The notes below the pieces were generated by a model. It ran no database searches, was not told where the DNA came from, and saw nothing but the letters and a program-made list of their open reading frames with translations. Made by a program: the position numbers and the translations under genes. A DNA stretch of 63,317 nt, counting the filler, from Guillardia theta CCMP2712 (lineage: Eukaryota; Protista; Cryptophyta), in assembly GCF_000315625.1 (NCBI RefSeq). It is 9 parts of 9 records of this genome, joined end to end, with 100 filler letters (N's around TTAATTAATTAA, not from the genome) between each part and the next. Parts side by side here need not be neighbours in the genome. Positions count along the whole stretch, not along the records: positions 8,286 to 24,562 come from NW_005434660.1; 8 more parts are not named here. One strand, 5' to 3'. Positions 8,186 through 24,662 of the stretch are shown piece by piece. The number at the start of each line of letters is the position of its first letter. The first letter of the stretch is position 1.

Positions 8186-9500
8186 NNNNNNNNNNNNNNN
8201 NNNNNNNNNNNNNNNNNNNNNNNNNNNNNTTAATTAATTAANNNNNNNNNNNNNNNNNNNNNNNNNNNNNNNNNNNNNNNNNNNNAGCAGAGGAGAGCCG
8301 AGTAGTGGAGAGGAGAGCAGAGGAGAGCAGAGTAGAGTAGACTAGAGGAGAGTAGAGTAGAGTAGAGTAGAGTAGAGTAGAGGAGAGGAGAGTAGAGGAG
8401 AGGAGAGTAGAGTAGAGTAGAGGAGAGGAGGAGTAGAGTAGAGGAGGAGCTTGACATGAATCTCATTTCTCAGCTCGCTCTCTTGTGACTGTGCCAGCTC
8501 TTTCAACTTCTTCATCCCTTTGACCTGTCAGGTGAAGTTGCTCACCTACTACTCTAATTGTCTCCTCCTCTCTCACCGCTGACGCATGCGCCACTGCCGA
8601 TGACTGCACGAATGCAGCGCATTGAATCCTGATGGAAGATGATGCGACGAGAAGAGAAGGAGACAAGAACGCAACAGGACAACAGAAGAATCCAGGGAGA
8701 AGAAGAAAAGGAGGGGCAGGAGAAGGAAGAAAAGGAGGGGCAGGAGGAGGAAGAAGGGGGGGGAAAGGAGGAGAAGGAGGAGAAGGAGGATTACCTCAAT
8801 ATGCTGCAGGTCTTGTCGACGCTTGTGCTGACTTCCGCTAACGCGTCCTCAAGTATTGCAATCTGAAAGACTTAGCGGGACAAAGGGACAAGGAAAGAGA
8901 GGGAGGGAGGGAGGGAGGGAGGGAGGGAGGGAGGGAGGGAGGGAGGGAGGCCGGGCGGGCGGGCGGGCGGGCGGGCGGGCGGGCGGGAGGGCGGGCGGGC
9001 GGGNNNNNNNNNNNNNNNNNNNNNNNNNNNNNNNNNNNNNNNNNNNNNNNNNNNNNNNNNNNNNNNNNNNNNNNNNNNNNNNNNNNNNNNNNNNNNNNNN
9101 NNNGGCCGGCTGGCCCGTCAATGCTTGGACCTCTAGGGTGGAGACTTCGTTGTTGTGAAGGGAAGCCTAAGCAGCGGTGGATCAAACGTAAGGAGGAGGA
9201 GGAGGAGGAGGAGGAGGAGGAGGAGGAGGAGGAGGATGGCGGCGAGGGGTTACAGTCTCAGGTCGATGCTGAGAGGAACTCAGACTTCTTCTCAGGTTAG
9301 CAGCCTGTTCCCAAGTTCAGACTCTCTCCCCACTCTCCTTTCTCTCTCTCCACCCCCGGCCTTCCTCTTACTCCTCCTCCTCCTCCCCCTCTCACTTCTC
9401 GGCTGCTCATCTGCAGTTCGTCATCCTTCTGCTTGATCAGCGCCTGCAGCTCCTCCAGCCTTCACGTCGTCACCAGCACGAAACAACAACCTCCTCGCCG

Positions 9501-10814
9501 TCACCGCAGCCGAAGTCGATGCGTTTCATCCTCCTCCTGCTTCTCCTCCTGCTTCTCCTCCTGCTTCTCCCTCTCCCTCGTCTGCTTCTCTTTCTCCTCC
9601 TCTCGCTCGCTGATTGACTTGAACCTCATCAGTTGCAGAGCATCAAAGGAGGACAAGCCCTACCGGATCTTCCGACACCGGCTGGTCTACCCACATCTGC
9701 GGATTTCCCAGCACCGGCTGGTCTGGTTGTTGTCTCTCGTCTCCGCCCTTGACGGTTTGTGTGTGAGCGTCGAGGCATGAGGGTGAAGTCTGAGAAGTCT
9801 GAGACGAGGAGGAGCAAGTCGCGGGTCGATGCAGCTGCTGGCTCATGATCTTGCTTTCACACAGAGATCGCTCCATTTCCCTCATTCGCTCTCGCAATTG
9901 CCTGCCATGTCCACAGCTCGCTTCCTCCTCCTCCTGTTCCTCCTCCTCCTCTCACCTCGTCTCCTCGAAGGAAGTGTTGAGCGCTTCCAGCAGTCTCTTC
10001 CGCTCATTCTCTCTCCTCACGCTGTGAATGGCGTCAGGTTGGTCGTGGTGAGGAACGAGAACCTGAGCCAGGCCTGCAGCAGTTCGCTCAGCGTCTCCTT
10101 CCTTCGCTTCTCTGCCTTCTCCTTGGTGACCCTCGAGGTCAGACTGACGTCAAGCTCACCCGTGAGTTCACCTCCCCCTCTCTCACTTCCTCTTTTACCT
10201 CCTCGCCCTCACCCTCGCCGCCCATTCGCAGAAGAAGCTTCTCTCCCTCCTCGCCAGCGTCTGTTGAGGATGTTGAGGAGGACGGAGGTGGGGAGGGGCA
10301 GTGCAGGGAAGGGGAGGGGAGGGGAGCGCATCACCAGGGCCGGAAGCTTGAAGACAAGTTTCAATGCCATGTGCGATGTCAGCACTTGCTGGCCCGCCTC
10401 CTTCGCCTGCATGAGTTGTTGCGGCTGCTCCTCCTCCTTCTCCTGCAGGAGCTCAACCGAATGGAGGGAGAAGGTCGGCAGACCTTGAGCGACGTCGGGA
10501 GCTCTCGCATGCCTGACGTGATGACGAGGGAGAGCAGCAGCGTTGAGAAGGCGGAGGAGAGAGCCATGACGATCTGACCGAAAGACTTGAGAGCGAGAGG
10601 CGAAGAGAAGAGGGAAGGTGAGGTGAGGGGATGGGGAGGGAGGATCTCTCAGGGGGGGAGGAGGAGTAGACAGAGAAGGAAAAAGAAGAATGGTTGGTTT
10701 GAGAAGGAGGAGGAGCGAGGGGGGAGGGGAAAGGACCTGCAACCCTAGCACGTGGTTGATCGCGATGGACCCAAGAGTGAAGGCGAGGTATCTCCGCAGC
10801 TCGACGACATTCAT
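9501..10814 (-). CDS. Possible multi-exon hypothetical membrane/coiled-coil protein
   Basis: Coding-like segments (MNVVELRRYLAFTLGSIAINHVLGLQ|; MALSSAFSTLLLSLVITSG; MERSLCESKIMSQQL...) separated by pyrimidine-rich GT-AG introns. Confidence 0.3.
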
Positions 10815-10983
10815 GGGAGGGAACTAACGAAAGGTAAGAAAGAACAAGACCTTGCGCTATCATCAAGGTGTTGAAGATATCTCCTCCTCCCTCTCCTTCA
10901 GATTATCATCAACTTTTCTACTTTCATCATCTCCTGACGGCCTCATCCAGTAAACTCTTCCTCAGTTTCTATTCATCCTCGTA

Positions 10984-11037
<54 letters not shown>

Positions 11038-13082
11038 ATCTTCCATCTCTTCGCCGCTTGCGGTCACCAGCCTGTCTTTGGCTCGGGTCTTGTCAATTTT
11101 TTCTGAAAGACTATCTTAGTTGACTGATTTTGCCACGTCGGTGCTGTATGAGGCCCTTCACATCACTTAAAAAAAACGTCAAAATTGATATCTCCGGAAA
11201 TAGATCTGGTGGCTGGGGGGGAATGCGAGGTAGGAGGTGAAGGAGACTGAGCTCAGATCTCGCTGCTCCTCATGGCTCCTCCTGCTCGCCTTGTAGCTGC
11301 TGCTCTCGCAGGTCCACCTCGCAGGCCTCTAGGCCCCGTGACTGTACCCGTGACTGTATGACCCCACAGGAGCCTGCGTGCTGGCATTCGTCTTTGCCTC
11401 TTCTCAACATCATTCTCGTTCGTCGCTTGAGGCAGCAACAAGCTCCTGCTGTCTGCCCTCTGAAGTTTCTCCAGGAATCCACAAGTGACTTGAAGAAGTC
11501 TCAGGCATCGAGACTTCACAGGTGAGCGATGAGCGATGAGCGATGAGCGATGAGCAATGTGCGATGTGCGATGAGCGATGAGACATGTTCAGATATTCGA
11601 GGCTGAAGGAGCTTTCTCGCCACCGAAGTCAAAGCCTTGAAGGTACTGAGAAACGGGACTGCAAGATTGTCTGAAAGAGGTGGAACTCTAGAGTTTCAGC
11701 CCAACATCTTCGAGAAGTTTGTCTTGCCACAAGCGCTGAATCAAGAGAAGAAGCACGTAGCAGGTGCGAGCGAGAGATCGGAGTGATAAGACGTTGACGT
11801 CGAGCCCCCAAAGAAGAGAGACAAGAAGCATCGGAGCGACCAGATGTGGAAGAGGCAGGCGAAAAGGACAGGGAGGATGTGCGGGAGGATGTGCGGTCTG
11901 CAGCGACTTGGAAGCAAGACCCGCTCCTGGTAAGTGCTCGCCCAGTCGCTGGCCCATGAGATCATTTCCACGTACAGATCCCGTCTGTCGATGCAAGCAA
12001 TGGCGGAGTAAACGACAGGCAAGCGAGGGAAGAGGAGGAGGAGAAGTGAAAGCATGGCAGACAAGTGCTGCAGTGGGAGGCAGACTTGGACTGGAAGCTG
12101 CAGCAGGTCGAGGAGGAGAGGAGAGGGCGTGTTGTCAGAGGCGAGGTCATGTTGCTTGCAGATGGACCAGCAGCTGCAGCGAGAAGTTGAGCGAGAGAAC
12201 CGCGAGCTAACGAGGCGGGGCCGCTAGCCGTCTCTTTCTGGCTCTGACTGAATCCCCGATGTTAGGGAGGAGAAGCTTCTGGTGATTGAGAAGGAAAGGT
12301 TGCGTCAAGGTGATAAGTACATGGCCCCTGTCCTCGGCGTTGACTTTGAGGTGTGCAGGAGCTCCGTTGGCGGTACCCATTCTCTTGTTCTCATTCTCTT
12401 GTTCTCATCCTCTTGTTCTCATCCTCTTGTTCTTATTCTCTTGTTCTTATTCTCTCTCTTCCCTCCTCCTTATCTCCCAACGATTTGTAGTTTGATTTAG
12501 TCAGGCTCGCTTCGTCCTCTGTGCGAGCCTGACTAAATCTTCTCCTTCGTCTCACTTCTCACCCAAGTCACCTCCTCTTGTCTGACTCCTGATTGTGTTG
12601 AAATTTGAGGGGTGAATGTTTTAGGTGTGGACAGCATTTGTTTCTCTCGTCTTTCTCCTCTTCCTCCTCCTTCTCTGCTGTTGTTGGAGATATCTGCAGG
12701 TACCCTTCCCCTTTTCCTCATATCCTTCCTTTTCTTCGTTTTCCTTGTCCTCCTCGTCTTTTCCCTAAATGTTTTAATCTACTGTGTACAGCGTGAGCGT
12801 CTTCGGCACGCTTATGCTCCTGCGGAGACACGAGCAAAGACAGTGGAGGTCGTCGACCTCAAGCGAGGTCAGGCGCTGAGGGTCTCGTTCCTGTCTCACT
12901 CTCCTGCGCAGCAGGGAGCACGGAAGCGGAGCGGCAGCTGAAGGTCGGGCTGACTTTTGGTGTACGAAACTGAGAGGAGGCTGGTAGGAGGGGACGCCGT
13001 CTGTCCCGCTCCACGTCAAAGCAGCTCAACTCAATGACGTGAGGCAACCAAGAGATGGGAAGGGACAAGAGAGGAGGACGAA

Positions 13083-13134
<52 letters not shown>

Positions 13135-13172
13135 GGTGGAGGGTTGAGGGTTGAGGGTTGAGGGCGAGGGTT
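13083..13172 (+). repeat. Telomere-like (TTGAGGG)n heptamer tract
   Basis: About 12 tandem GAGGGTT units with two variants. Confidence 0.9.
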
Positions 13173-14877
13173 CTTGTTCTGACCTGCCTCTTCCATCCAG
13201 CTTCTCGATCGTCATGCCTCCATCCGAGCAGCCAGCGCGAGGATCGTTTCGAGTTCACACGCTCGCGCGGTCACTCGGCAGTTCGAGGAGGAGACGAGAC
13301 GGGTAAGAGGAGGACAGCAAGAGCTGCCAGTGACATCCTGCAGGTCAACTTGCCGCAAGTAAAGGGAGGAGGTGGTGGCGCTGGTGGTGGGGGATGGGGA
13401 GTGCAGGTGGGCGAGCAAAGAGTTTTTTGATTTTTTTGTTTAGTTGTGATCATTGAGCAGGTTCAGCTCCCGCCCCTGCCAATAAGCTCCTACCCCCCCA
13501 TCCTCTCACAACCACAAGACGGCAGCATGCTTGAGTCAGCTGTTGAGTCCGGGCCCAACCTCGCGCCCTCTCCTACCACTCGGCTGTTCTCGCCCGCAGT
13601 CTCTTCCGATCTGCTTTCCTTCCCGTTGCTGAGTCAGCTCTGACAGGAGGAGAAGCAAGGTGAGGCTGGGCCCTCAAGCCGCGTGTCTCCTCCCTCTTCG
13701 TCTCAGCCGCTTCCTTCTTCGTACCTGCATGCCAGCAGATCTCAGGTAGGAGTATTCTACAGCTCGAGGATGAGAGTCTGAAGCTTGCTTCCTCCTGCTG
13801 CCCCTCAGATGGTTCAAACGTCTCCACGCATCCTCGCGTCCCCGCGGCTGCCGCTAGCAGGCGGCGCTGCTTCAGACTGGCTCTTCGGGTCACGGTAACG
13901 CCCAGCTGGATGGCCGAGTGGAGCTTGACGAAGAGCAGGTGGCAGTGGTCAGCTGGGGGGCAGGCTGAGGGGGTCGCTGAGCTCTGCGTCGATGGTGAGC
14001 TCAGAGAAGTTGCCGTGAAGAAGCTGAGGAGAGAAACAGGCTCGTTCAAAGCGCCTTCTGCTGGACAACATGCACACTGGTGAGATGAAGAAAGAGAGGA
14101 GAGACGAGGAGGGAAAGGAGGGGGAGGGGGAGGGGGAGGGGGAGGGGGAGGGGAATGAGGAAGAGGAGAGTGACGGGGATGGCAGTAAGGTTGATGGGTA
14201 TCTCAGGTGGCTGGATGAGCAGGGGAGGCTCAACGTGGAGTGGGGCAACCGGCTTGGGCTGCACGTACTAGTGGTAGGAGGGGAAGAAGCGACGGCAGGG
14301 AAGTGACGGGGGGCAGGTGGACAAGGGGAGGGGAAGGCTCACGGGAATGCGATCCAACGGTAAGGCGAGGAAGGGGAGAGAGCTGGGGAGCGCAGGAGGA
14401 AACGAGGAAGGAGAAGGTGATGAAGAGCTGGTGCAGGGAATGTGCCAGTGGAGGCTCAGCTGCTGAGAGATCAGAGGGAGCAGGTGTGCACTGTCTCCTC
14501 CTCCTCCTCTCACCCCTCGCAGGACCTGCCGCCTGCCTTCTTCTCGCCCAGGGTCTCGACGCTCCCGCTGATCCACGAGGACTCGCGAAGGTCGACAGCA
14601 GCTGCTCGGCATGCCGCTGACTCCCGCAGGTCGGAGGAGAGTGGGAGCCTCGAGTGGAGCTCCATGCTGAACCAGGGAGGTGAAGAGAGCGGCGATGCTG
14701 GCAGTGGCTCACCGAGACGATGAAGGAGATATGGGGGGCGAAGGGAGGAAGAGGGAGAGGAGGAGGAGGGAGAGGAGGAGGGAGAGGAGGGAGAGAAGGA
14801 GGAGGAGGAGGAGGAGGAGGAGGAGGAGGAGGAGGAGGAGGAGGATTCAAGGTGGTATAATACAATCTATCTACAAG

Positions 14878-17800
14878 CTACTCCACGTGCCCACCAGCTA
14901 TCTCAGCCTTAGCGTGACACCAGGTGCCGGAGAAGACCTGCCGGAGGATATCCCTGCTTCCTTGTCAGCACGCCGAGGAGAGCAAGTCATGCGACAGGGA
15001 GGAGGGAGGAGCAAGTGGCGATGGGAAGAGAGTAGGAGGAGGAACGGGAGGAGGAGCAGGAGGAGGAGGAGGTGGTGGAGGGAGAGGCTGCTCACCTGAT
15101 CTCTCGCTCTAGGAGCACGCAGACAGCATGGAAGAACTCTGCTTGCGTGCTGCCTACCCCCTCCCCATCCTCCAAGAGCTCGTTCACCTCCCGCGGGATC
15201 TCTAGGATGATGGCCCCATGGTCCCCCACCTGAGCATGGAAATGACCAGACGCTTTCTGCTGCACGAAGTTGGTCAGCCCGAAGCAAGCTCCGCTGTCCA
15301 GGATCTTGTAAACGTCATCCAGCCGCTTCAGCTTCACCTGCCCCGAGAACACCATGAAGATGCTCGCCGCCTTGTGCGCGAGCGCGAACTCGCTTCCTCG
15401 CTCCAGCCGGTGCACCTTGCCGTACCGGTCGAGGATGCTGGCGAAGGAGGGCTGGCGGTGAGCGGCTTCAGTGCTGCTGCCGGCCTTGTGGAGGGTGATG
15501 TTGCGCTTGAGGAGGCTGAAGACCTGGAAGGCGCGATGAGCCGAGGCCAGCGAGAGCTCGATGGTGTCGTAGAGGACGGAGGAGCCGTCGCCCTCCCTGG
15601 AGACGCGGATGATGAGGGCGGTCTGCTGGTAGCGATCCTTGAAGACGACGCTCTCCAGGCAGGAGAGGGGGATGAGGCGCGACTGAGAGTCGATGACGGG
15701 CCCGTAGATGAGCGGGTCGAGGATCACGAACTTGGTGAAGAAAATGATCCTCATCTTCACCTCCCTGCGGACCGTCGGCTGCCTCAACTTGCACTTGAAC
15801 GTCTTGAGCAGCCGCTCTGTCAGCGGCAACCCGAACATCCTGATGCAGTGCGCCCGTAGCCGCTCCTTTGCGTCCTGCTCGGGGAGGACGGAGCGATCGT
15901 TGAGAGCCTTGAGGGAGGCCATGCGGATCATGTCCATCTGGATGCGGTCGAGGCGCATGGCGAGGAGGATGCTGAGGGACTTGTAGAAGGAGCTCGTCTC
16001 TCCTGCTGTCCGCAGCCCCTCGATCGAGATCTTCTCGATGTCTGCCATCCCCTCCCCGCACCTCATCTTGTTCATCCTCAGCAGCTCGCGGTCTCTCGCC
16101 TGGTCGCTCATGCTCCCCTCCTGCACCTCCTGTGGCGTCATCAGCATGCGGATCGAAAACTTTTTGTTCCTCAAGGGCGATGAGATCTTGTACATCTCTT
16201 CCTCCTCCACCACACTCATGTCTCCTTTCTTGATGATCTTGGATGCTTGTTGGATCTGAAACATCCACTTCTCACGCTCCTGCTCGCTCGATGCGCTGCA
16301 GTAGAAAATACGATTCTGCATGACATCTTGGATCGCAAACGCCCACACACACGAGTTGTCCGTGTGCTCCGACACTTTGCAGTCGCGCAGGTTCACGATG
16401 CCCTTGGCGCCCTGGTTGCTCTTGAACGCTTCCTCGCTCGAGTAATACTCCAGCTTCTGCCCCTTTAGCACGAAGTAGCGATCCTTCCAGGCTACGTTGT
16501 ACCATCCCCGCTTCTTGAGCACGCCTCTGCGAGGGATGTCAGAACCTTCATAAGTGATTTCTCGCCTCCCCGCAACAGAGGGAGAAGATGAGAGGGCAGG
16601 AGGAGAGACGGCAGGAGGATCGACTTACTGTAGGACAGAGCGGCAAAAGGAGAGCTGGACCATGCTTGTAGTCTGTCCTTCCTCCTGGTATGCGCGCAAG
16701 GCACATCCTCGCTTGACGAGGCAGACGACCCGCGTGTTGTCCTCGCGAGCTCGCAGGCTCATGAAGTTCCCGTCATAGAGAAAGTCTGACCCGGGCACGA
16801 AGGAGCCGGAGCCGAAGATGCAGAGGATGGGGACGCGGAGGTTCTGCCGGTTGTTCTCGTCGGGGATGCTGTTGCCGAGGCTGTGAAAGTGCGCCATCCC
16901 GCTGCTGTCGTCCTGCACGATGCCCTCGACGGCCCCCTGCTGGATGAAGTAGACATAGTCGTCTCGGAACGACTCCTTGGTCAGGAACTCTCCCTTGCGC
17001 AGGTTCAAGGTGATGGCGAACTCGTTATGCACGAACATGAGCTGGAACGACTTGATCTGCGCCTCGATCAGCCGGTCGCTCGCCTCCCCTTCAAAGCAGA
17101 GGTGCTTCATCTCCGGCTTCAGGTGGACTTTCATGTGGAACGTCGGGTCTACCAGCTGGTTGGAGCTGTCCTTGTGCAGCATGTCCACGTTGCGCTTGCG
17201 GAAGATGATGACGTTGCTGCCCTCGTAGAAGGACGTGTGGAACATGACGAAGAAAGCAAGCTTCCGTTTCGCATTCATCCCGAGGGTCTGGAGCAAGTTT
17301 ACAGGTCAACCTTGGAAAGGGAGAACAAGACAAGGGGAGGCGGGGAAGAAAAACTGACCGGGTGAATGTAAAAGTCTATCCTGACGTCTGTCCAGATCAA
17401 GATCTGAGTGTTGAGCTCAATGTTGACCCCATAGCGCTCTGATTTGGTCTTGACAATCTCTTGCGGAGGCCCGAAGTCAAGAGAGTCGTGCACGACCGTC
17501 CTTTGACACCTCACGACGAAGCTGCAAGTGCTAGAGTGAGCAGGCAGCCTAGAGGACAGAGAGAGAAGAGAAGGAGAGCGAAAAGAAGGATTATGAAGAA
17601 GGGAGTGAGGAAGGTGAGAGGAGGAGAGGGAGGCAAGGCAAGGGAGTTCAAGCAGAGCAAGCGAGGGGCAGGCCCTTCACCTCATGCGCAAAGACTTGTA
17701 CTTCTCCATGAAGCGATTGCAGTGCAAGGTGAGTTTCTCCATGAACCGATACTTGACACTCCAAGGGTCTACCCCGCTGTACAGCACGGCCTCGAGGTAG

Positions 17801-20620
17801 TAGACGTACCGGAGCTGGCTCGGGCCCTGCACCCCCTGATTGTGCTTCACGTTCCTCCTCCCCACCCCGTCCTCCATGTCCTCGTCTAGCCCGTCCTCGG
17901 GGTTGTAGTCCTGCGTCCTCCGGTACGTGAAGAGCTCTAGCGCGTCCAGCGCGCATCTTCGATGCCCAGTCCAAAGGAGGAGGGCGGCGATCATAACGCC
18001 CGTCCTCCCCTTCCCTCCCTTGCAGTGCACTGCTATCGTGTTCTGCCGGTCCCTCGCCATCCACGCGCAAGACTCCTGGCACATGAAGACGAGCTCCGAC
18101 AGGAGGGGAGGCGCGTGATCTTCGAACGGGATCCTCTGCACTTGGTTGAAGAGCAGCTGCGGGTGATAGTTCCCCATGACGCCGTCGGATGAGTTGTAGG
18201 TGTCGCAGAGGTTGAAGATGAAGAACTTCCCGTAGTGCCGCTGAGAAAGGAAGCGCGAGACGATGTGAATGTCGTTACGGAAGGCCGTGTGACCACCAAA
18301 TGCAGGAGCTGACATGGCGATGATCCTATCTGTGATGTACGTGAGGTCCAGGTTGTAGCCATGCCTCTTGTATCTTCTCTTGTTCTTCCAAAACTTGTCA
18401 GATGACAGGCACATCATTCATCGTCCTTACCTGAGAAACTGCCTTCCTCAGCTTCTGGTTGACTGCTCCGCTCAGCATTCTCGCCCGCCTCACCGTCACA
18501 AGGACGCGCACAAATCGCATGACCATCGCAATCCTGGAGAACACTCGCAAGCTCGTCGCAGTGTTCTTCGTAGACTGAAGGCTGCTGGCTACTCCGCTTT
18601 GAGACTCGAAGATGTACTTGGTGACCTGCGAGGCAACAAGTATCAGACATATCATCATCAAGTATCAGACATATCATCATCAAGTATTAGACATATCATC
18701 ATCAAGTATCAGACATATCATCATCAAGTATCAGACATATCATCATCAAGTATCAGACATATCATCATCAAGTATTAGACATATCATCATCAAGTATCAG
18801 ACATATCATCATCAAGTATCAGACATATCATCATCAAGTATTAGACATATCATCATCAAGTATCAGACATATCATCATCAAGGCTCGGGCCTCACCAGGA
18901 CCCCCGTGCTCAACCAGATGACCACGAAGTCAAAGATGTTCCACATGTTGGACCAGAAACGCATGCGCTGGGCGATCTGCCGCAGTGAGAGCTCGAGAAG
19001 AAAGAGAGACATCACGGTGAAGTTGATCGCAGTCTGCCAAGGCTGCTCAGAGTCCGACGAGTAATAGAAGGTGTAGATCATGATGTTTGAGAGGTCCACC
19101 ATGACGAGCACCAACACCATGATGTTCACCCACATAGACTCCATCGCCTTCTCCAGCCTCTCTCGCCAGTAGAACTCCGACGGCTCTTCCCCGTAGTCAA
19201 TGTCTTTCTCTTCGGCCTCTGCAAACAGGTCCTCGATCTCGGGCATCTGCAGCTCCGGTGTCCAGGAGGGGAACTTTGAGATCGACTGAGATTCCTTCCT
19301 CGCAGTTTCCAGCGGGAGATCCTGATTCTGGTACGACATGGACCCTGCTAACGAGTGGCTGCTCTTGTGGAAGAAGTAGCCCGCCGCGATCGTCGAGGTC
19401 CGCTGCAGCATCGAATCGCTCATGTCGCGGCTTTCAGGCCGAAACTCACAGAGAGAAAGAGACTTGGACAAGGAAGGAGGAGACCAGGTTCTATTTATCG
19501 GCTGCATCTGCAGCTCAACATCTACCTCACATGGCAACCCGTCATGCCCCATGACCGGATCCCCAGACAAGGTGCTGAGAACAAACGTGAAAAGCTTCGG
19601 CACGTTCTCGAGGGAGCAGAGGACAATCAAGTCCACAGAGACCTTCCCCACATAATCGTTGGCACTTAACAGGTCCCAGTCGAAACATTCGATCACCAGT
19701 GCGATGCCACACGACGCTCCCTCATTCACTTGCAAACTCTTGGCAAATTCTAACTGCATCTCGTGTACGAAGAACTCGAAGCTTTCATGGTACGCGTGCT
19801 CGTAGACATTCTTTGCAACATGTGTGGACGTCTTCTGCTGATCGAAGGAGAGCACGAGGAAAGGATCGCATCTGGCATTAGCGTCCATCTGTGGAAGATG
19901 TCGCACAGCGAGCTTCCGGGCATGCAGCATCATGTGCGAGGGTGGTGGGCCTGCTCTCTGGTCCGGAACGAGGCCATCTTCAAGGATGTCATGCTGTTCA
20001 ATGTAACGAGCCTCAGTGAAAGGATAGATGAAATCCCCTGCCGACAAAGTTTCCGTGCCCTGAAGTTTCCTCTTCTGCTTTCTCTCTACTGCTTCCGTGG
20101 TGTCATCGGAATCTTGTACCGCAGCCCGAGAAGGAGCTGGAGTAGCGGATAGAGAGCTCATGTAGTCAAAAACAATGTCTCCACGTATGTTTCCTTCAGC
20201 CATCACTGAACGCTCTGATTCTGCCCCATCAACCACAATATTCAACAGCCTTTCCTCGGAAAAAATGTGCCTCGAATGCAGGCAATCGCTGTCAACATGC
20301 AAGGGATCAGCATGGGGGTCAGCACCATTGGATGAGGGGCACTTTGCTTCTTTCTCCTGTACAGTGCCTGAGGGCTCAAGAAGTTCAGCCTCTGATAGCT
20401 CGCCGTTGATATGACTGTTGGTCCCTTGCTGTGAATCTGCCAGCCACCACAATGCGCCCGTTTCAACTTGGGCTGGTTGCGTTGCTAGTGGCAGCTGGAT
20501 GACAGTTGTAGTTGTCGAGTTGACAGACTCGTTTCCGCGTCCTAGTCCTTCAGATTCGCCCTCCGTGCTGCGAGATTCATACTTTGGAACCGGGAATTGA
20601 TCACGAACTTTTGACAATCG
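14878..20620 (-). CDS. Multidomain voltage-sensing phosphoinositide phosphatase (VSP/TPTE-like): C2 - VSD - PTEN-type phosphatase - PTEN C2 - CNB-like - PH - GRAM-like - CNB-like
   Basis: In-frame exons: 20620-18896, 18625-18431, 18384-17681, 17521-17359, 17287-16629, 16526-15096, ~14953-14878. Motifs: S2 FLLELSLR, S3 WNIFDFVVIW, Arg-rich S4, linker SQ|NKRRYKRHGYNLDLTYITDRIIAMS, PFEDH, HCKGGKGRTG, PSQLRYVYY, PH WKDRYFVL...EREKW. True start and last exon are uncertain. Confidence 0.9.
18638..18882. repeat. 22-bp minisatellite (TATCAGACATATCATCATCAAG) x~11 filling a VSP intron
   Basis: Direct reading. Lies inside intron 18626-18895, between the S3 and S4 exons. Confidence 0.95.
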
Positions 20621-20789
20621 CTGGGGCGAGATGGAGGGGAGTGGCACAGGCGCTCTGTTGGGATGGGTGTGAGAGCTATGGGTGGGGATGATGACTGTCA
20701 TTCTCTCTCTCACTCTCTCTCGTCCTCCTTCCTCTCCCTCCTCCTCTTCTGCCTCCCTGCCCTCCCTTCCCCTCATGCCCTGAACACCT

Positions 20790-23000
20790 CTAACAAACAA
20801 TTTACCCACCCTCTCTCGACCACCCCTCTCGACCACCCCTCTCGACCACCCTACCTCCATACGCCCCCTACCACCTACGGTTACCACTTGTCCTTTTCCT
20901 ATCCCACCCCCCCATACAGCCACATCTCACGATTGTTATGACCCCCCTTCCTACCCACCCCGAGATCCGTTTGATAACAGTACCCCTTCGAAGAAGTCAG
21001 CACCCGTTGAAAATATCAACAATATAAACCACACCTGTGTCCAGGTACCCCTACCCTCAATTTGACTAGCATTATCATCTCTACCCCCACACCCTACCCC
21101 CCTATTCCCCAGTCTTTCTCGGTCAGAGCCTAGGAATGCCTTGCGTGAATCCACTCCCCTACTTCTTGTCTCCGTACCCTACTGAGAAATCCAGGACCCC
21201 TCATTCTCAGACATAGCACCCTCGTTTCAATTCTTGTACCCTCATTTACACACCCACCAGGGAAAATGTATCATACACACGTGGTTCAGTACCCCTCCCC
21301 ATAGCTTGAAAAACGGGGTATTCAATTTCCTATTCATGTACCCCTCCCACCAATTGAAAGTACCCCACCATACCAATATCGTTCTTTTCCAACCACCGAC
21401 CATAGTAGACGACATACCCACGCCATTGGGGCATCCTCCCCTCAATATTCTTTTCTACCCACATGTTTCCCATGTGATCACCCACCCTCTAGCAATTTCG
21501 GTACCATTCGGGTCTCCGGAGCTGATTTGTAAAACCACCTCGTCTACCCCACTTACACTCAGCCTGTACCCCACCCACCCTCTTTCGATGAATCTTGATT
21601 GGTCTACCCTACCCCTAGACTCCATGACTCTTCCCCCATGGCTGGTAGAAAACCACCCACCCCGTGGTCTTCGGAGTTAAAACACTCGGTAACTTTCATC
21701 TCCATACCACCATATCAACACTACTACTGTACCCCCCCACCCCCCACTTCGACCTCGAATCGATTGAAACCCCACATGCCGAGGTATACCCACCCCAGGA
21801 GGACCTCAGCGTTAATAACCCCCCGGTACATTTGAGGATAAATTGTCGGACATTAACATTTGAGTACCGGTACCATTCCATACCAAGTTTTCACTACCCC
21901 TAGGAGGGCCATCAAACCCCTCTATCTCCCACCCCTACCTACCTTTCAAGGCCTCTTCATCCGACTCTTCCCGGCATTATACACAAAAAATGGTTTCACA
22001 CATTTTATCTGGCCCACCCCTACCCTCTACGGTTCAGACCGTATTACCATATGGGAGATCACCCGTCATTTACACCCAGGACCCTACCCCACCATACCTG
22101 GATGACCTTTCGAGTAAAGCAATCATCAGAGACCCGACTACTACATCGAATCCACTTTTGACCACCTCTATCAAAATACCCCACTCCTAGTCCTTTACCC
22201 TACCCAGAATCCATGAGGAGATTTTACTTGAACTAACCGGTACTGAATAACCCCTACCCCTAATCAACAATAATTATGTAACCCCCACCCCTAAATATGC
22301 CCTCGTGAGTTAAACTTTCTACCACCCCACCCCCTCGCTCGCCCTCACTGATTTTTAACTTCTCAGTGATGGCAGTTATTTAGTAACGGCTACAGTCGGG
22401 TTACCGTGCCACCGTGAACTTCGGAACCGGGCGGGCCGGGCCGCTCAGCCGCAGCCGCAGCGGTCAGTGACGGTGGGCCGCGACCACCACCGGCCCGGCC
22501 CGGCATGATCATCGGACCGTCACTGGCACGTACGCGTGAACTACGCCGCGGCGCCGGCCCCGCCGGGGCCTCAGTGAGACCGCCGTCCTGAGTCCGCATT
22601 CACCGTGTCGGAGCCCGGCCTGGGCCTCGCCTGCCAGCCTAGTACGGTGCGGTACAGGCACTCCGCCGATCGCCGCACCGTGCGGCGGCCGCGGGCGTTT
22701 CAAGTACTCGACCGTCTCACTGTGACTGGCTCGGAGAGTGGCAGGAAATCCGAGTGAGCTGAGTCCGCCAGTCATGCAAGCAAGTTGGCCCGGCGCCGGG
22801 GACCGTGCGTGTGACCGTCGGGCCCGTCCAGGCTCCAGGCTCGGTCCGTCACAGAGACCGCCGCGCCGTCACGAGTCACTCCGAGTCAGTCGGGCCGCGC
22901 GGGGCCCGGCGGCCGCCCGGCCCGGCGGCCGCAGCCAGCGCAGTGCTGCCGCGTGCCCGGCGTGGCAGTACTCGACTCCGGCGACGATGGCATGGCGGAC
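20790..23000. other. ACCC-rich non-coding tract (20790-22340) adjoining a GC-rich palindrome island (22400-23000), upstream of the VSP gene
   Basis: TACCC/CACCC words throughout the tract, then a CCGG/GGCC/TCAGTGA/GAGTCA-rich block. Confidence 0.6.
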
Positions 23001-23233
23001 TCAGAAGCACTGCGGCATGGGGCTGCTTCAAGGCTTCAAGGCTTCAGGGCTTCAGGGCTTCCGAAGTTCAAGGCTTCAGGGCTTCAAGCCAGAGTCTGAC
23101 AAGGGAGCACGAACACAGCGGCGTCGCTTTTGGACGGGACTCCCTCCTGTCTCCGATCTCCCGTATCCGCAAGGCTGACTCAAGTGATCCGATCGGAAGC
23201 GCCTTATCGTGCTGGAGCCTTGGGTCGGCATCT

Positions 23234-24420
23234 TCAAGCTTTGCACGTGTAGAGAAACCATCTGTTGTCCTCATCATACGTCTCACAGCTCACTTCCCTC
23301 CATAGCTGCTCGCCCTCTGCTGATGCTTGTCGCAGGAACGGCATCCGGTAAGTCGGCTCCTCATAGGAGACCACCAGGTATACCCCGTCGCTCTTGAGTC
23401 TGCGAGAGCATCAGTGCCGTGAATGAGCAATCCCATGCGCTCTGACATTCTGCGCAGCTCCACCAAGACCTTCCTTCCTTTCTCCTCTGCTTCTCTCGCC
23501 GCTCTCTTCAGGAAGGGATCTTGTGCCTCCTGCAATCCTCCGGCTCATGAGAACAGATCCGCCCCGGTGGATCGCCAACCTTCTTGCCACTTCGCTTCCA
23601 CAGCTCTCGCCGATCATGGACGGCCAGGACGGAGTCGAGGAGCCCCTTGTCGACGACCTGGCGCGTGTGAGAGGAGCGGGTGAACAGGAGAGGCGAGCGG
23701 ACAAGAGCGATGGAGGCGTCGGAGAACGCGAGGGCTGCTGCGTCCATGTGGAAGAGGTGCAGAGTTTGCTCCTTCGCGCCTGCGCATTGCTCCCGCTCAG
23801 CCTGCAGGGTCCCGTCACCCCCCTCACCCCCAGCAAGACGAGAAAGGTGAATTGCAGCAGCGTCTGCACTCAGTCGAGGGGGGCAGAAGAAGGAGCATGT
23901 CAACTCTTACCTGGAGCTTCTTGATGACGACTGGGCTGAAGTCGATGCCGATCACTCGCGTGTATCCCTCTACAGCCTTGATCACGTCCTCACTCTACAG
24001 CCACCCACCCACCCACCCTCCCTCTTTCCCTCCCCCTACAGCCACACTCCCTCCCCTCGCTCGCTGCCTTCACCCGCCTTCACCGTCGCAGAGGTCCCAG
24101 ATGAGACGAGAGCTGCCGCATCCAACATCGAGGATTCTGTCGGAGGAGCCAACGCCAGTTCGCTGCTTCCGAATGAGCAGAGGATGAATGAGCAGAGGAT
24201 GAATGAGCAGAGGATGAATGAGCAGAGGATGAATGAGCAGAGGATGAATGAGCAGAGGATGAATGAGCAGAGGATGAATGAGCAGAGGATGTGAGCAGTG
24301 GATCTCACCTTGATGGCTTCAATCATCACATCCTGCCCTTTGCTTGGAAACCACTCGAAGTGACTCACTTGTGAGCTGCCTGATGCTTTTGCATCTACCA
24401 CTATGGTCAGCTTAATATCA
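23234..24420 (-). CDS. Class I SAM-dependent methyltransferase, EEF1AKMT4/METTL13-N-like (5' end probably in the gap)
   Basis: Spliced motifs FEWF, GYTRVIGIDFSPVVI, MDAAALAFSDAS, VVDKGLLDS, LKSDGVYLVVSY...FLYTCKA*. Confidence 0.8.
24171..24291. repeat. 15-bp intronic minisatellite (GAATGAGCAGAGGAT) x8
   Basis: Direct reading. Lies near the donor of a methyltransferase intron. Confidence 0.93.
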
Positions 24421-24453
24421 CAGTACAAACAATTGCTCCTCTACTTCCATTGC

Positions 24454-24517
<64 letters not shown>

Positions 24518-24662
24518 GCCATCATCATCATCGCCATCATCATCATCGCCATCATCATCATCNNNNNNNNNNNNNNNNNNNNNNNNNNNNNNNNNNNNNN
24601 NNNNNNTTAATTAATTAANNNNNNNNNNNNNNNNNNNNNNNNNNNNNNNNNNNNNNNNNNNN

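What the first reader, a model, noticed from the sequence alone, without database searches (positions are those of the whole stretch)
14878..20620. Voltage-sensing phosphatase fused to Ca2+-type C2, PH, GRAM-like and two cyclic-nucleotide-binding-like domains
Seen: five separate ORF-track fragments join in frame through canonical GT-AG introns (270, 46, 159, 71, ~102 nt) into one protein of well over 1500 aa. Domain order: N-terminal C2 with acidic loops (MDANARCDPF, DWDLLSAND), S1-S4 voltage sensor, SQNKRRY linker, phosphatase HCKGGKGR, PTEN-type C2, CNB-like, PH, GRAM-like, CNB-like. Established: characterised VSPs (Ci-VSP, TPTE/TPIP) are VSD+phosphatase+C2 only, and HCKGGKGR is the VSP rather than PTEN (HCKAGKGR) signature. 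Inference: an algal single-chain integrator of membrane voltage, Ca2+, phosphoinositide sensing and possibly a small ligand. I know of no described VSP with this architecture.
Basis: partly seen in the sequence, partly recalled or inferred. Interest (0 to 1): 0.92.

Follow-up and report, generated by a model that had tools for sequence, protein, structure and literature searches.

The report
Multi-domain voltage-sensing phosphatase of a cryptophyte
This is a real, expressed seven-exon gene of the alga Guillardia theta that joins a voltage sensor and a PTEN-like lipid phosphatase (a voltage-sensing phosphatase core) to a calcium-type C2 domain, a PH domain, a second PH-like domain and two cyclic-nucleotide-binding-like domains. 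The layout is conserved in related protists, and I found no paper that describes it.

Summary
On the minus strand, 14878-20701, lies one gene of 7 exons and 6 GT-AG introns (270, 46, 159, 71, 102 and a sixth of 142 nt). All six joints are seen spliced in transcript-like contigs of two independent studies, with no mismatch to this locus. The product is about 1,677 aa.

HMMs, solved-structure searches and AlphaFold/Foldseek support this order:
- an N-terminal C2 with all five synaptotagmin-type Asp;
- an S1-S4 voltage sensor;
- a basic linker (SQNKRRY...DLDLTY);
- a PTEN/VSP phosphatase (HCKGGKGRTG; best solved match Ci-VSP, 1.4e-36);
- a PTEN-type C2;
- a CNB-fold domain;
- a PH domain (9.6e-14);
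- a helical linker;
- a second CNB-fold domain.

Both CNB domains lack a canonical phosphate-binding cassette, so cAMP/cGMP binding is doubtful.

The organism is Guillardia theta CCMP2712. Its public annotation holds only a 250-aa partial model of this gene. The genome has about five paralogues with the same plan. Collinear homologues occur in the cryptophyte Teleaulax, and the C2-plus-voltage-sensor part in Hanusia. Many unnamed marine metagenome proteins also share the plan.

My literature searches found no description. I rate it a new variant of a known kind (VSP). Its function is inferred, not shown.

The parts
18896..20701 (-). Exon 1 (CDS from the candidate ATG at 20701; the ORF is open to 20923). 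It encodes a low-complexity N-terminus, the C2 domain, and S1, S2 and most of S3.
   Evidence: ORF; model; RNA contigs reach about 20760-20780.
19628..19924 (-). N-terminal C2 domain with a complete five-Asp Ca2+-ligand pattern (D-x6... loop 1 at 19859-19888; D-x-D-x5-D loop 3 at 19655-19684).
   Evidence: Pfam C2 1.3e-9, 38.6 bits against a cut-off of 22. It aligns to dysferlin and synaptotagmin-1 C2B with the Asp positions matched. Conservation in paralogues is shown.
18476..19135 (-). Voltage-sensor domain S1-S4, interrupted by intron 1: S1 19067-19135, S2 18968-19030, S3 18623-18946 (split by the intron), S4 18476-18550.
   Evidence: Pfam Ion_trans 3.1e-7. PDB hits to Cav/Nav/NavAb voltage sensors and to the Ci-VSP VSD 4g80. 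Read in the family alignment: a conserved S1 Asp, S2 F-x-x-E-x-x-x-R, an S3 Asp, and S4 Arg at 3-residue spacing.
18626..18895 (-). Intron 1 (270 nt, GT-AG), almost filled by a 22-nt tandem repeat of 11.2 copies (18637-18882).
18431..18625 (-). Exon 2: end of S3, the S3-S4 loop, S4 and the start of the linker.
18385..18430 (-). Intron 2 (46 nt, GT-AG). An alternative in-frame AG lies 9 nt upstream.
   Evidence: The spliced form recreates SQNKRRY, as in Ci-VSP.
17681..18384 (-). Exon 3: the basic phosphoinositide-binding linker (18331-18436 including exon 2) and the PTEN/VSP phosphatase domain. It holds FEDHAPP at 18106-18126, the CX5R motif HCKGGKGRTG at 17998-18027, and a TI-loop region at 17797-17835 with an acidic insert before it.
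   Evidence: PDB: Ci-VSP 1.4e-36, TPTE2 5.5e-33, PTEN 1.5e-31. Pfam DSP/PTP families.
17522..17680 (-). Intron 3 (159 nt, GT-AG).
17359..17521 (-). Exon 4: first half of the PTEN-type C2.
   Evidence: Family members hit PTEN_C2 over this part.
17288..17358 (-). Intron 4 (71 nt, GT-AG).
16629..17287 (-). Exon 5: end of the PTEN-type C2 (to about 17120) and the first CNB-fold domain (about 16685-17086; cassette region 16742-16813).
   Evidence: Pfam PTEN_C2 4.8e-7; cNMP_binding only 0.006 and 16.9 bits, below the 27.5 cut-off. 12 of 26 homologues hit cNMP_binding. AlphaFold model pLDDT 67.5, with all top-50 Foldseek matches being CNB domains.
16527..16628 (-). Intron 5 (102 nt, GT-AG).
15095..16526 (-). 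Exon 6: PH domain (16238-16525), a linker with two long helices, a PH-like ('GRAM-like') sandwich (about 15467-15880) and the second CNB-fold domain (15095 to about 15466; cassette region 15227-15292).
   Evidence: Pfam PH 9.6e-14. Nearest solved PH domains are myosin X, CERT, FAPP1 and Akt2. AlphaFold pLDDT 86, pTM 0.79. VIA-align Z 12-13.5 to PH domains over model residues 67-204. Foldseek matches to PKA-R, PKG, SLC9C1 and EAG CNB(H)Ds. 17 of 28 homologues hit cNMP_binding and 0 of 28 hit GRAM.
14953..15094 (-). Its donor overlaps the apparent TGA stop.
   Evidence: RNA contigs of X1 and X2 jump from 15095 to 14952; loose ends of raw RNA reads in X17 at 14956.
14878..14952 (-). Exon 7: the C-terminal tail with the conserved F-(P/S)-G-T-W motif (14920-14952) and the stop TAG at 14878-14880.
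   Evidence: Homologues carry FPGTW at the same place.

Best explanation
This is one nuclear gene of Guillardia theta encoding a protein of about 1,677 aa that belongs to the voltage-sensing phosphatase (VSP) kind.

Shown here:
- The gene is transcribed and spliced as modelled.
- It encodes an S1-S4 voltage sensor joined by a basic linker to a PTEN-like phosphatase with intact catalytic motifs and a PTEN-type C2.
- This core carries an N-terminal Ca2+-type C2 and a C-terminal extension: CNB-fold, PH, helical linker, PH-like sandwich, CNB-fold, and an FxGTW tail.
- The whole plan is conserved in paralogues and in other cryptophytes and marine protists.

Inferred:
- Depolarisation moves S4. As in Ci-VSP, the linker then brings the phosphatase onto the membrane, where it dephosphorylates PI(4,5)P2 or PI(3,4,5)P3. 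The Gly in HCKGGKGR suggests a VSP-like 5-phosphatase preference.
- The C2 adds Ca2+-dependent membrane docking.
- The PH domain, which has a K-x-G...K-x-R-Y signature, reads substrate or product lipids and so gives feedback or localisation.
- The two CNB-fold domains plus the PH-like domain form an allosteric or autoinhibitory module. Its ligand, if any, is probably not cAMP or cGMP.
For: Splicing and continuity: all six introns are skipped in the RNA-type contigs of X1 and X2, which match 100%.

Domains: Pfam; phosphatase against Ci-VSP at 1.4e-36 with the linker and CX5R motif aligned; voltage-sensor hits and conserved charges; the five C2 Asp; fold models and searches.

Family: collinear homologues P0157, P0230 (Teleaulax), P0158, P0159, P0161 and P0010. 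P0157 aligns in one stretch to human TPTE2 residues 25-502.

Paralogues on C150, C21 (two), C4 and C190 show the same order of parts. The extended family forms a clade with 100% SH-aLRT, and all VSD-bearing phosphatases lie on one side of a branch with 82%.
Against: - No functional data exist. Voltage dependence, substrate and ligand binding are all inferred.
- S4 has non-Arg residues at two of the seven 3-spaced positions, and exon 2 alone finds nothing in the PDB.
- The S1-S3 part is no closer to Ci-VSP (0.003) than to channel voltage sensors (1e-6).
- The G. theta CNB domains are below Pfam's cut-off. CNB2 lacks the cassette Glu and Arg, and the Arg is lacking in the whole family.
- The TI-loop residues (Q-G) match neither PTEN nor Ci-VSP, and an acidic insert precedes them.
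- No single contig spans the full mRNA, and the 5' end and start codon are uncertain.
- No animal VSP was in the tree.
Confidence: 0.8

Rival explanations
1. Gene-model artefact: a VSP-like gene followed by a separate CNB/PH gene, or exons of paralogues joined wrongly.
For: No single RNA contig spans exon 1 to exon 7; the two contigs overlap by only about 22-30 nt. The public annotation has only a 250-aa partial model.
Against: One contig in each of two studies runs from exon 2/3 (phosphatase) through every C-terminal domain to the stop, with 0 mismatches and in-frame splicing. Intron-free or transcript-derived homologues of 1,188-1,638 aa are collinear over the whole length. Five paralogous loci keep the same order.
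Confidence: 0.03
2. The S1-S4 domain is mainly a membrane anchor, or a proton or ion path, rather than a switch. The enzyme would be controlled by Ca2+, lipids or a ligand of the CNB-fold domains, with little or no voltage control.
For: S4 carries fewer regularly spaced Arg than Ci-VSP. A conserved Asp sits in S1; a review notes that Ci-VSP lacks such a residue while Hv1 uses one (PMC10377628). Four extra regulatory domains exist.
Against: S4 Arg at 3-residue spacing, the S2 F..E...R motif and the S3 Asp are conserved across the family. The S4-to-linker distance and the SQNKRR motif are invariant, as expected if S4 motion is transmitted. There is no Hv1-type R-x-W-R motif.
Confidence: 0.13
3. 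The CNB-fold domains are true cAMP or cGMP sensors, which would make this a cyclic-nucleotide-gated VSP.
For: The CNB fold is supported. Many family members pass Pfam cNMP_binding, the best at 1.3e-9. Most members keep the F-G-E start of the cassette in CNB2, and CNB1 keeps an Arg near the cassette end.
Against: CNB2 has no cassette Arg in any of the 28 aligned members, and G. theta also lacks the Glu (FGL). CNB1 has G-S-D or G-A-S instead of G-E. Neither G. theta domain reaches Pfam's cut-off. The best fold matches of CNB1 include cAMP-independent, nucleoside-binding trypanosome PKA-R.
Confidence: 0.2
4. A catalytically dead or decaying copy of an expanded gene family.
For: There are several paralogues, and one of them (C4) shows stops inside matched stretches.
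Against: This copy has an uninterrupted 5,031-nt CDS. Cys and Arg of CX5R and the Asp of FEDHAPP are intact. It is present in transcript-type assemblies from several studies.
Confidence: 0.03

Closest known systems
Ci-VSP / TPTE / TPTE2 (voltage-sensing phosphatases of animals)
   Same: S1-S4 voltage sensor, then a basic linker (NKRRY..DLDLTY), then a PTEN-like phosphatase with the identical HCKGGKGRTG motif, then a PTEN-type C2. Ci-VSP is the best solved match of the phosphatase. The homologue P0157 is collinear with TPTE2 over the VSD, phosphatase and C2.
   Different: About three times longer. It has an extra N-terminal Ca2+-type C2 and about 650 aa of C-terminal CNB-fold, PH, PH-like and CNB-fold domains. 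S4 has a sparser Arg ladder, the TI-loop residues differ, and there is an acidic insert in the phosphatase. The host is a unicellular alga.
PTEN
   Same: Phosphatase plus C2 core and the N-terminal basic motif; match at 1.5e-31.
   Different: PTEN has no voltage sensor and has Ala rather than Gly in HCKAGKGR. PMC6182344 names A126 and the TI loop as specificity determinants.
SLC9C1 (sperm Na+/H+ exchanger)
   Same: A non-channel effector that combines an S4-type voltage sensor with a cytosolic CNBD (PMC6052114). Its CNBD is among the fold matches of CNB2.
   Different: The effector is a transporter, not a lipid phosphatase, and its CNBD binds cyclic nucleotides through a canonical cassette.
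KCNH (EAG/ERG) cyclic-nucleotide-binding homology domains and cAMP-independent trypanosome PKA-R
   Same: A CNB fold with a degenerate cassette that does not bind cAMP or cGMP. Both appear among the fold matches.
   Different: The protein context is different, and no sequence-level relationship was shown.
Short protist VSD-PTEN proteins (e.g. Triparma retinervis, Pycnococcus provasolii, Prymnesium parvum hypothetical proteins)
   Same: VSD plus phosphatase plus C2. Their phosphatase domains sit on the same side of the tree as this family.
   Different: They are 500-700 aa and have no CNB or PH extension. As far as my searches show, they are also uncharacterised.

Membership tests
Voltage-sensing phosphatase (VSP) | N-terminal four-helix voltage sensor with periodic S4 Arg and S2/S3 counter-charges | tested here: met
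   Pfam Ion_trans 3.1e-7. PDB matches to Cav, Nav and NavAb voltage sensors and to Ci-VSP 4g80. S4 Arg at 3-residue spacing, S2 F..E...R and the S3 Asp are conserved in 16 sequences.
Voltage-sensing phosphatase (VSP) | Sensor joined directly to the phosphatase by a basic phosphoinositide-binding linker | tested here: met
   Splicing of the 46-nt intron gives SQNKRRYKRHGYNLDLTYIT, which aligns residue for residue with the start of the Ci-VSP catalytic fragment.
Voltage-sensing phosphatase (VSP) | PTEN-like CX5R phosphatase with Gly at the VSP position (HCKGGKGR) followed by a PTEN-type C2 | tested here: met
   Ci-VSP 1.4e-36 with the motif identical. Pfam PTEN_C2 4.8e-7. P0157 is collinear with TPTE2 residues 25-502.
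Voltage-sensing phosphatase (VSP) | Sensing currents and voltage-dependent phosphoinositide dephosphorylation | not testable with these tools
   This needs electrophysiology with lipid reporters.
Voltage-sensing phosphatase (VSP) | Common descent with animal VSPs rather than an independent VSD-PTEN fusion | tested here: inconclusive
   In a quick ML tree of 53 phosphatase domains, all VSD-bearing proteins lie on one side of a branch (SH-aLRT 82). No animal VSP sequence was available for the tree.
Ca2+-binding C2 (synaptotagmin type) | C2 fold with five loop Asp | tested here: met
   Pfam C2 38.6 bits against a cut-off of 22. Asp positions match synaptotagmin-1 C2B and dysferlin. The full set is kept only in copies C14, C150 and C21(+). 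Ca2+ binding itself was not tested.
Cyclic nucleotide-binding domain (PF00027) | Sequence match above Pfam's gathering score | tested here: not met
   CNB1 scores 16.9 bits against a cut-off of 27.5. CNB2 has no hit at E<=0.01. However, 12 of 26 and 17 of 28 homologues match at E<=0.01.
Cyclic nucleotide-binding domain (PF00027) | CNB beta-roll fold with flanking helices | tested here: met
   CNB2 model has pLDDT 86, with Foldseek matches to PKA-R, PKG, SLC9C1 and EAG. CNB1 model has pLDDT 67.5, with all top-50 matches being CNB domains.
Cyclic nucleotide-binding domain (PF00027) | Phosphate-binding cassette with Gly-Glu and Arg-(Ser/Thr)-Ala | tested here: not met
   CNB2 has FGL and no Arg; the Arg is absent in all 28 aligned members. 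CNB1 has G-S-D, and the family has G-A-S. An Arg is present in R-A-R, but its register is uncertain.
PH domain (PF00169) | HMM match above cut-off | tested here: met
   52.2 bits against a cut-off of 25.1, E 9.6e-14. Solved relatives are myosin X, CERT, FAPP1 and Akt2.
GRAM domain (PF02893) | GRAM HMM match | tested here: not met
   0 of 28 family members hit GRAM at E<=0.01.
GRAM domain (PF02893) | PH-like beta-sandwich with a C-terminal helix | tested here: inconclusive
   Z is 12.3 to the Lam6 GRAM/PH-like domain but 12-13.5 to ordinary PH domains. The PH superfold is supported; GRAM specifically is not.

The most novel reading that the evidence does not exclude
Cryptophytes and allied marine protists have a distinct class of voltage-controlled lipid phosphatase. 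In it, sensor movement is gated or tuned by Ca2+ (C2), by its own lipid substrate or product (PH), and by a CNB-fold module that binds a non-cyclic-nucleotide ligand or acts as an intrinsic-ligand autoinhibitor. In a phototactic alga rich in channelrhodopsins, this would turn light-evoked membrane-potential changes into phosphoinositide signals at the flagellar or plasma membrane.
Probability: 0.2. Interest if true: 0.85.

Novelty: new variant of a known kind. Interest (0 to 1): 0.62.

Why it matters
VSPs are the classic example of an enzyme driven directly by membrane voltage. The ones studied so far are animal proteins made only of a sensor, a phosphatase and a C2 domain. A conserved algal family that adds Ca2+-, lipid- and ligand-type regulatory domains would show that voltage-to-lipid coupling is old and widespread in eukaryotes, and that it can be combined with other inputs in a single chain. 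It would give experimenters natural variants for asking how the sensor-enzyme coupling can be modulated. It would also suggest a route from electrical signals, such as photocurrents, to phosphoinositide signalling in protists. Finally, it exposes an annotation gap: the G. theta gene is represented publicly only by a 250-aa fragment.

Tried and rejected
- Exon 2 (S3b-S4) alone finds nothing in the PDB even at E 10, so S4 was judged from the family alignment instead.
- The raw RNA run X17 covers only the 3' end (14801-15400) and so cannot test the internal joints.
- The ESM Atlas feature search gave only weak CNB leads (0.78, below the 0.9 level of trust).
- A search with the N-terminal C2+VSD part found only two proteins in its length range and no G. 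theta model.
- The last protein search was meant to fetch animal VSPs for the tree. It returned protist VSPs instead, so the tree has no animal VSP.
- Seven neighbouring ORFs in 8286-14700 and 20950-24562 have no Pfam match.
- The spliced full-length protein could not be handed to the fold or database tools, which take unaltered window pieces only. Every domain was therefore tested exon by exon, and no full-length model was made.
- An alternative 37-nt intron 2 was considered. It was rejected as the main form because the contigs show the 46-nt joint and only that joint recreates SQNKRRY.

Full report
**What is there.**
The finding lies on the minus strand. ORF listing and direct reading show six long open pieces in three frames. 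Joining them at GT..AG sites gives an uninterrupted frame. The introns are:
- 18626-18895 (270 nt)
- 18385-18430 (46 nt)
- 17522-17680 (159 nt)
- 17288-17358 (71 nt)
- 16527-16628 (102 nt)

**Transcript evidence.**
A search of public runs found 15 holders in 6 studies. I laid four runs on 14801-20800.
- In runs X1 (study P1) and X2 (study P2), contigs skip all five introns at the predicted bases and match the locus with 0 other letters. They therefore come from this copy and not from a paralogue.
- Run X12 is collinear with the genome, so it is DNA-like.
- The same RNA-type contigs jump from 15095 to 14952. This reveals a sixth intron of 142 nt, whose GT donor overlaps the apparent TGA stop. 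Loose ends of raw RNA reads in X17 at 14956 agree.
- The CDS therefore continues into a 25-codon exon 7 and ends at TAG 14878-14880.
- One contig of about 3.07 kb covers the phosphatase exon through every downstream domain to the stop. A second, of about 2.07 kb, covers the 5' end (to about 20760-20780) to exon 2.
- In X2 the 3' contig holds 22 nt of exon 2, and the 5' contig carries 8 nt of exon 3 beyond the joint, so the two overlap across intron 2.
- No single contig spans the whole mRNA, and the start codon is not fixed. The ATG at 20701 gives 1,677 aa, and the ORF is open to 20923.

**Organism and annotation.**
A 250-aa database protein that is 100% identical to exons 5/6 is GUITHDRAFT_151194, a partial model from Guillardia theta CCMP2712. 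The window maps to contig C14 of an 87-Mb, 669-contig assembly. No annotated G. theta model covering the N-terminal half turned up.

**Domains, in order** (coordinates).
1. N-terminal C2. Pfam gives 1.3e-9, above the cut-off. Alignment to synaptotagmin-1 C2B and dysferlin places Asp at all five Ca2+-ligand positions.
2. Voltage sensor. Pfam Ion_trans scores 3.1e-7. S1-S3 match Cav, Nav and NavAb sensors (1e-6 to 1e-4) and the Ci-VSP sensor (0.003). In a 16-sequence family alignment the following are conserved: the S1 Asp, S2 F-x-x-E-x-x-x-R, the S3 N-x-F-D, and S4 Arg at 3-residue spacing (five Arg in seven positions). The distance from S4 to the linker is also conserved.
3. Linker and phosphatase. 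The best solved matches are Ci-VSP (1.4e-36), TPTE2 (5.5e-33) and PTEN (1.5e-31). NKRRY..DLDLTY and HCKGGKGRTG align identically to Ci-VSP. The Gly/Ala position and the TI loop are specificity determinants according to PMC6182344. Here the TI positions read Q-G, which is unlike both Ci-VSP and PTEN.
4. PTEN-type C2, at 4.8e-7.
5. CNB1. The G. theta sequence is sub-threshold (0.006), but 12 of 26 homologues hit cNMP_binding. A moderate model (pLDDT 67.5) has only CNB domains among its top 50 Foldseek matches.
6. PH, at 9.6e-14. The nearest solved domains are myosin X PH2, CERT, FAPP1 and Akt2. From my own knowledge, its beta1-beta2 region has the K-x-G...K-x-R-Y pattern typical of phosphoinositide-binding PH domains. 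This is an inference.
7. A segment modelled with 28 homologues (pLDDT 86, pTM 0.79). It shows two long helices, a seven-strand sandwich with a C-terminal helix, and then a CNB-type roll with helices.
   - The sandwich matches PH domains at Z 12-13.5 and the Lam6 GRAM/PH-like domain at Z 12.3.
   - None of 28 members hits the GRAM HMM. It is best called PH-like.
   - The last domain matches PKA-R, PKG, the SLC9C1 CNBD and the EAG CNBHD, and 17 of 28 homologues hit cNMP_binding (best 1.3e-9).
   - The cassette Arg is missing in every aligned member, and G. theta also lacks the Glu.
8. The exon-7 tail carries F-S-G-T-W, matching the FPGTW of homologues. This independently supports the sixth intron.

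**Family.**
- An exhaustive profile-free search with exon 6 found 436 proteins. The best of these that cover the PH-like/CNB2 part also carry PTEN_C2, a phosphatase or Ion_trans.
- Collinear full-length relatives include a Teleaulax amphioxeia transcript protein (P0230, 1,475 aa). They also include metagenome or transcriptome proteins of 1,039-1,638 aa.
- A Hanusia phi protein has the C2+VSD part.
- They share C2 (often), VSD, phosphatase, C2, CNB1, the PH-like domain, CNB2 and the tail. The PH domain between CNB1 and the PH-like domain is an insertion of the G. theta copy.
- P0157, the closest contiguous relative (45% identity), aligns in one stretch to human TPTE2 residues 25-502.
- Within G. 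theta, six-frame searches show the same order of parts on C150, on C21, on C4 and on C190.
  - The C150 copy is 96% identical in the phosphatase exon and 74-78% elsewhere.
  - C21 holds two copies head to head, each with the PH domain after CNB2.
  - The C4 copy has stops inside matched stretches.
- The five-Asp C2 set is kept only in C14, C150 and one C21 copy.
- A quick ML tree of 53 phosphatase domains makes the extended family a clade (SH-aLRT 100). It puts all VSD-bearing proteins on one side of a branch (82).
  - Rows were chosen by hand.
  - No animal VSP was available.
  - Five rows have long branches.
- Ordinary-size VSD-PTEN proteins are common in protists, including Triparma, Pycnococcus and Prymnesium.

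**Literature.**
Five full-text searches and three papers gave no description of a VSP with CNB, PH or GRAM domains, nor of a cryptophyte VSP. One paper mentions VSPs in choanoflagellates (PMC12223298). SLC9C1 is the known case of a non-channel protein combining a voltage sensor with a CNBD (PMC6052114). The library does not hold most subscription journals, so absence here is not proof.

**Mechanism (inferred).**
- By analogy with Ci-VSP, depolarisation drives S4 outward, and the basic linker couples this to the phosphatase at the membrane.
- The intact Cys, the Arg of CX5R, and the Asp of FEDHAPP argue for activity.
- The C2 could add Ca2+-dependent docking.
- The PH domain could read substrate or product lipids.
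- The CNB1 ... PH-like-CNB2 module is conserved as a unit and has degenerate cassettes. It most likely acts as an allosteric or autoinhibitory module, or binds a ligand other than cAMP or cGMP.
- None of this has been tested.

**Verdict.**
I file it as a new variant of a known kind: a VSP with a conserved regulatory extension. It is not unique to this gene, and it is so far undescribed in the papers I could search.

Noticed in passing
window 18637-18882: Intron 1, which splits helix S3, is almost entirely a 22-nt tandem repeat (11.2 copies, 97% matches). It breaks the DNA and RNA assemblies at that place.
   Followed up: partly
window 18385-18430 (and 18394): A second in-frame AG lies 9 nt upstream of the intron-2 acceptor. 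It would give a 37-nt intron and insert three residues before NKRRY. Both RNA assemblies break their contigs at this joint, which may reflect alternative splicing. Only the 46-nt form was seen.
   Followed up: partly
G000 C150:26666-31418; C21:455730-460117 and 461991-466913; C4:1133922-1137982; C190:31767-37109: There are about five paralogues with the same domain order. The C150 copy is 96% identical in the phosphatase exon but only 74-78% elsewhere. The two C21 copies lie head to head and carry the PH domain after CNB2 instead of before the PH-like domain. The C4 copy has stops inside matched stretches.
   Followed up: partly
proteins P0269, P0304, P0312 and about 100 others: VSD plus PTEN-like phosphatase proteins of ordinary size (500-700 aa) are widespread in protists and algae (Triparma, Pycnococcus, Prymnesium, MMETSP transcripts). 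They are annotated only as hypothetical proteins or as PTEN-type phosphatases.
   Followed up: partly
protein P0240 (cluster of P0158): A 413-aa fragment of this eukaryotic family is labelled as coming from a Promethearchaeia archaeon MAG. This is probably a mis-binned eukaryotic contig. Members of that cluster are single 1,638-aa ORFs on metagenome contigs of up to 31 kb, so they come from an intron-poor organism.
   Followed up: no
window 14740-14845, 15030-15081 and 20806-20851: (GGA)n/(CCT)n-type and 13-nt repeats flank the gene and lie in intron 6. The RNA contigs end at them, which is why the UTR ends and the start codon stay uncertain.
   Followed up: no
window 8286-14700 and 20950-24562: The flanks are rich in purine/pyrimidine microsatellites. 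Seven of the longer ORFs there have no Pfam match, and no neighbouring gene was identified.
   Followed up: partly
window 14801-15400: The raw RNA run X17 (2026) covers only the last few hundred bases of the gene, all with the first mate on the minus strand. This looks like a 3'-biased library. It supports expression, the 3' end and the sixth intron, but nothing upstream.
   Followed up: no
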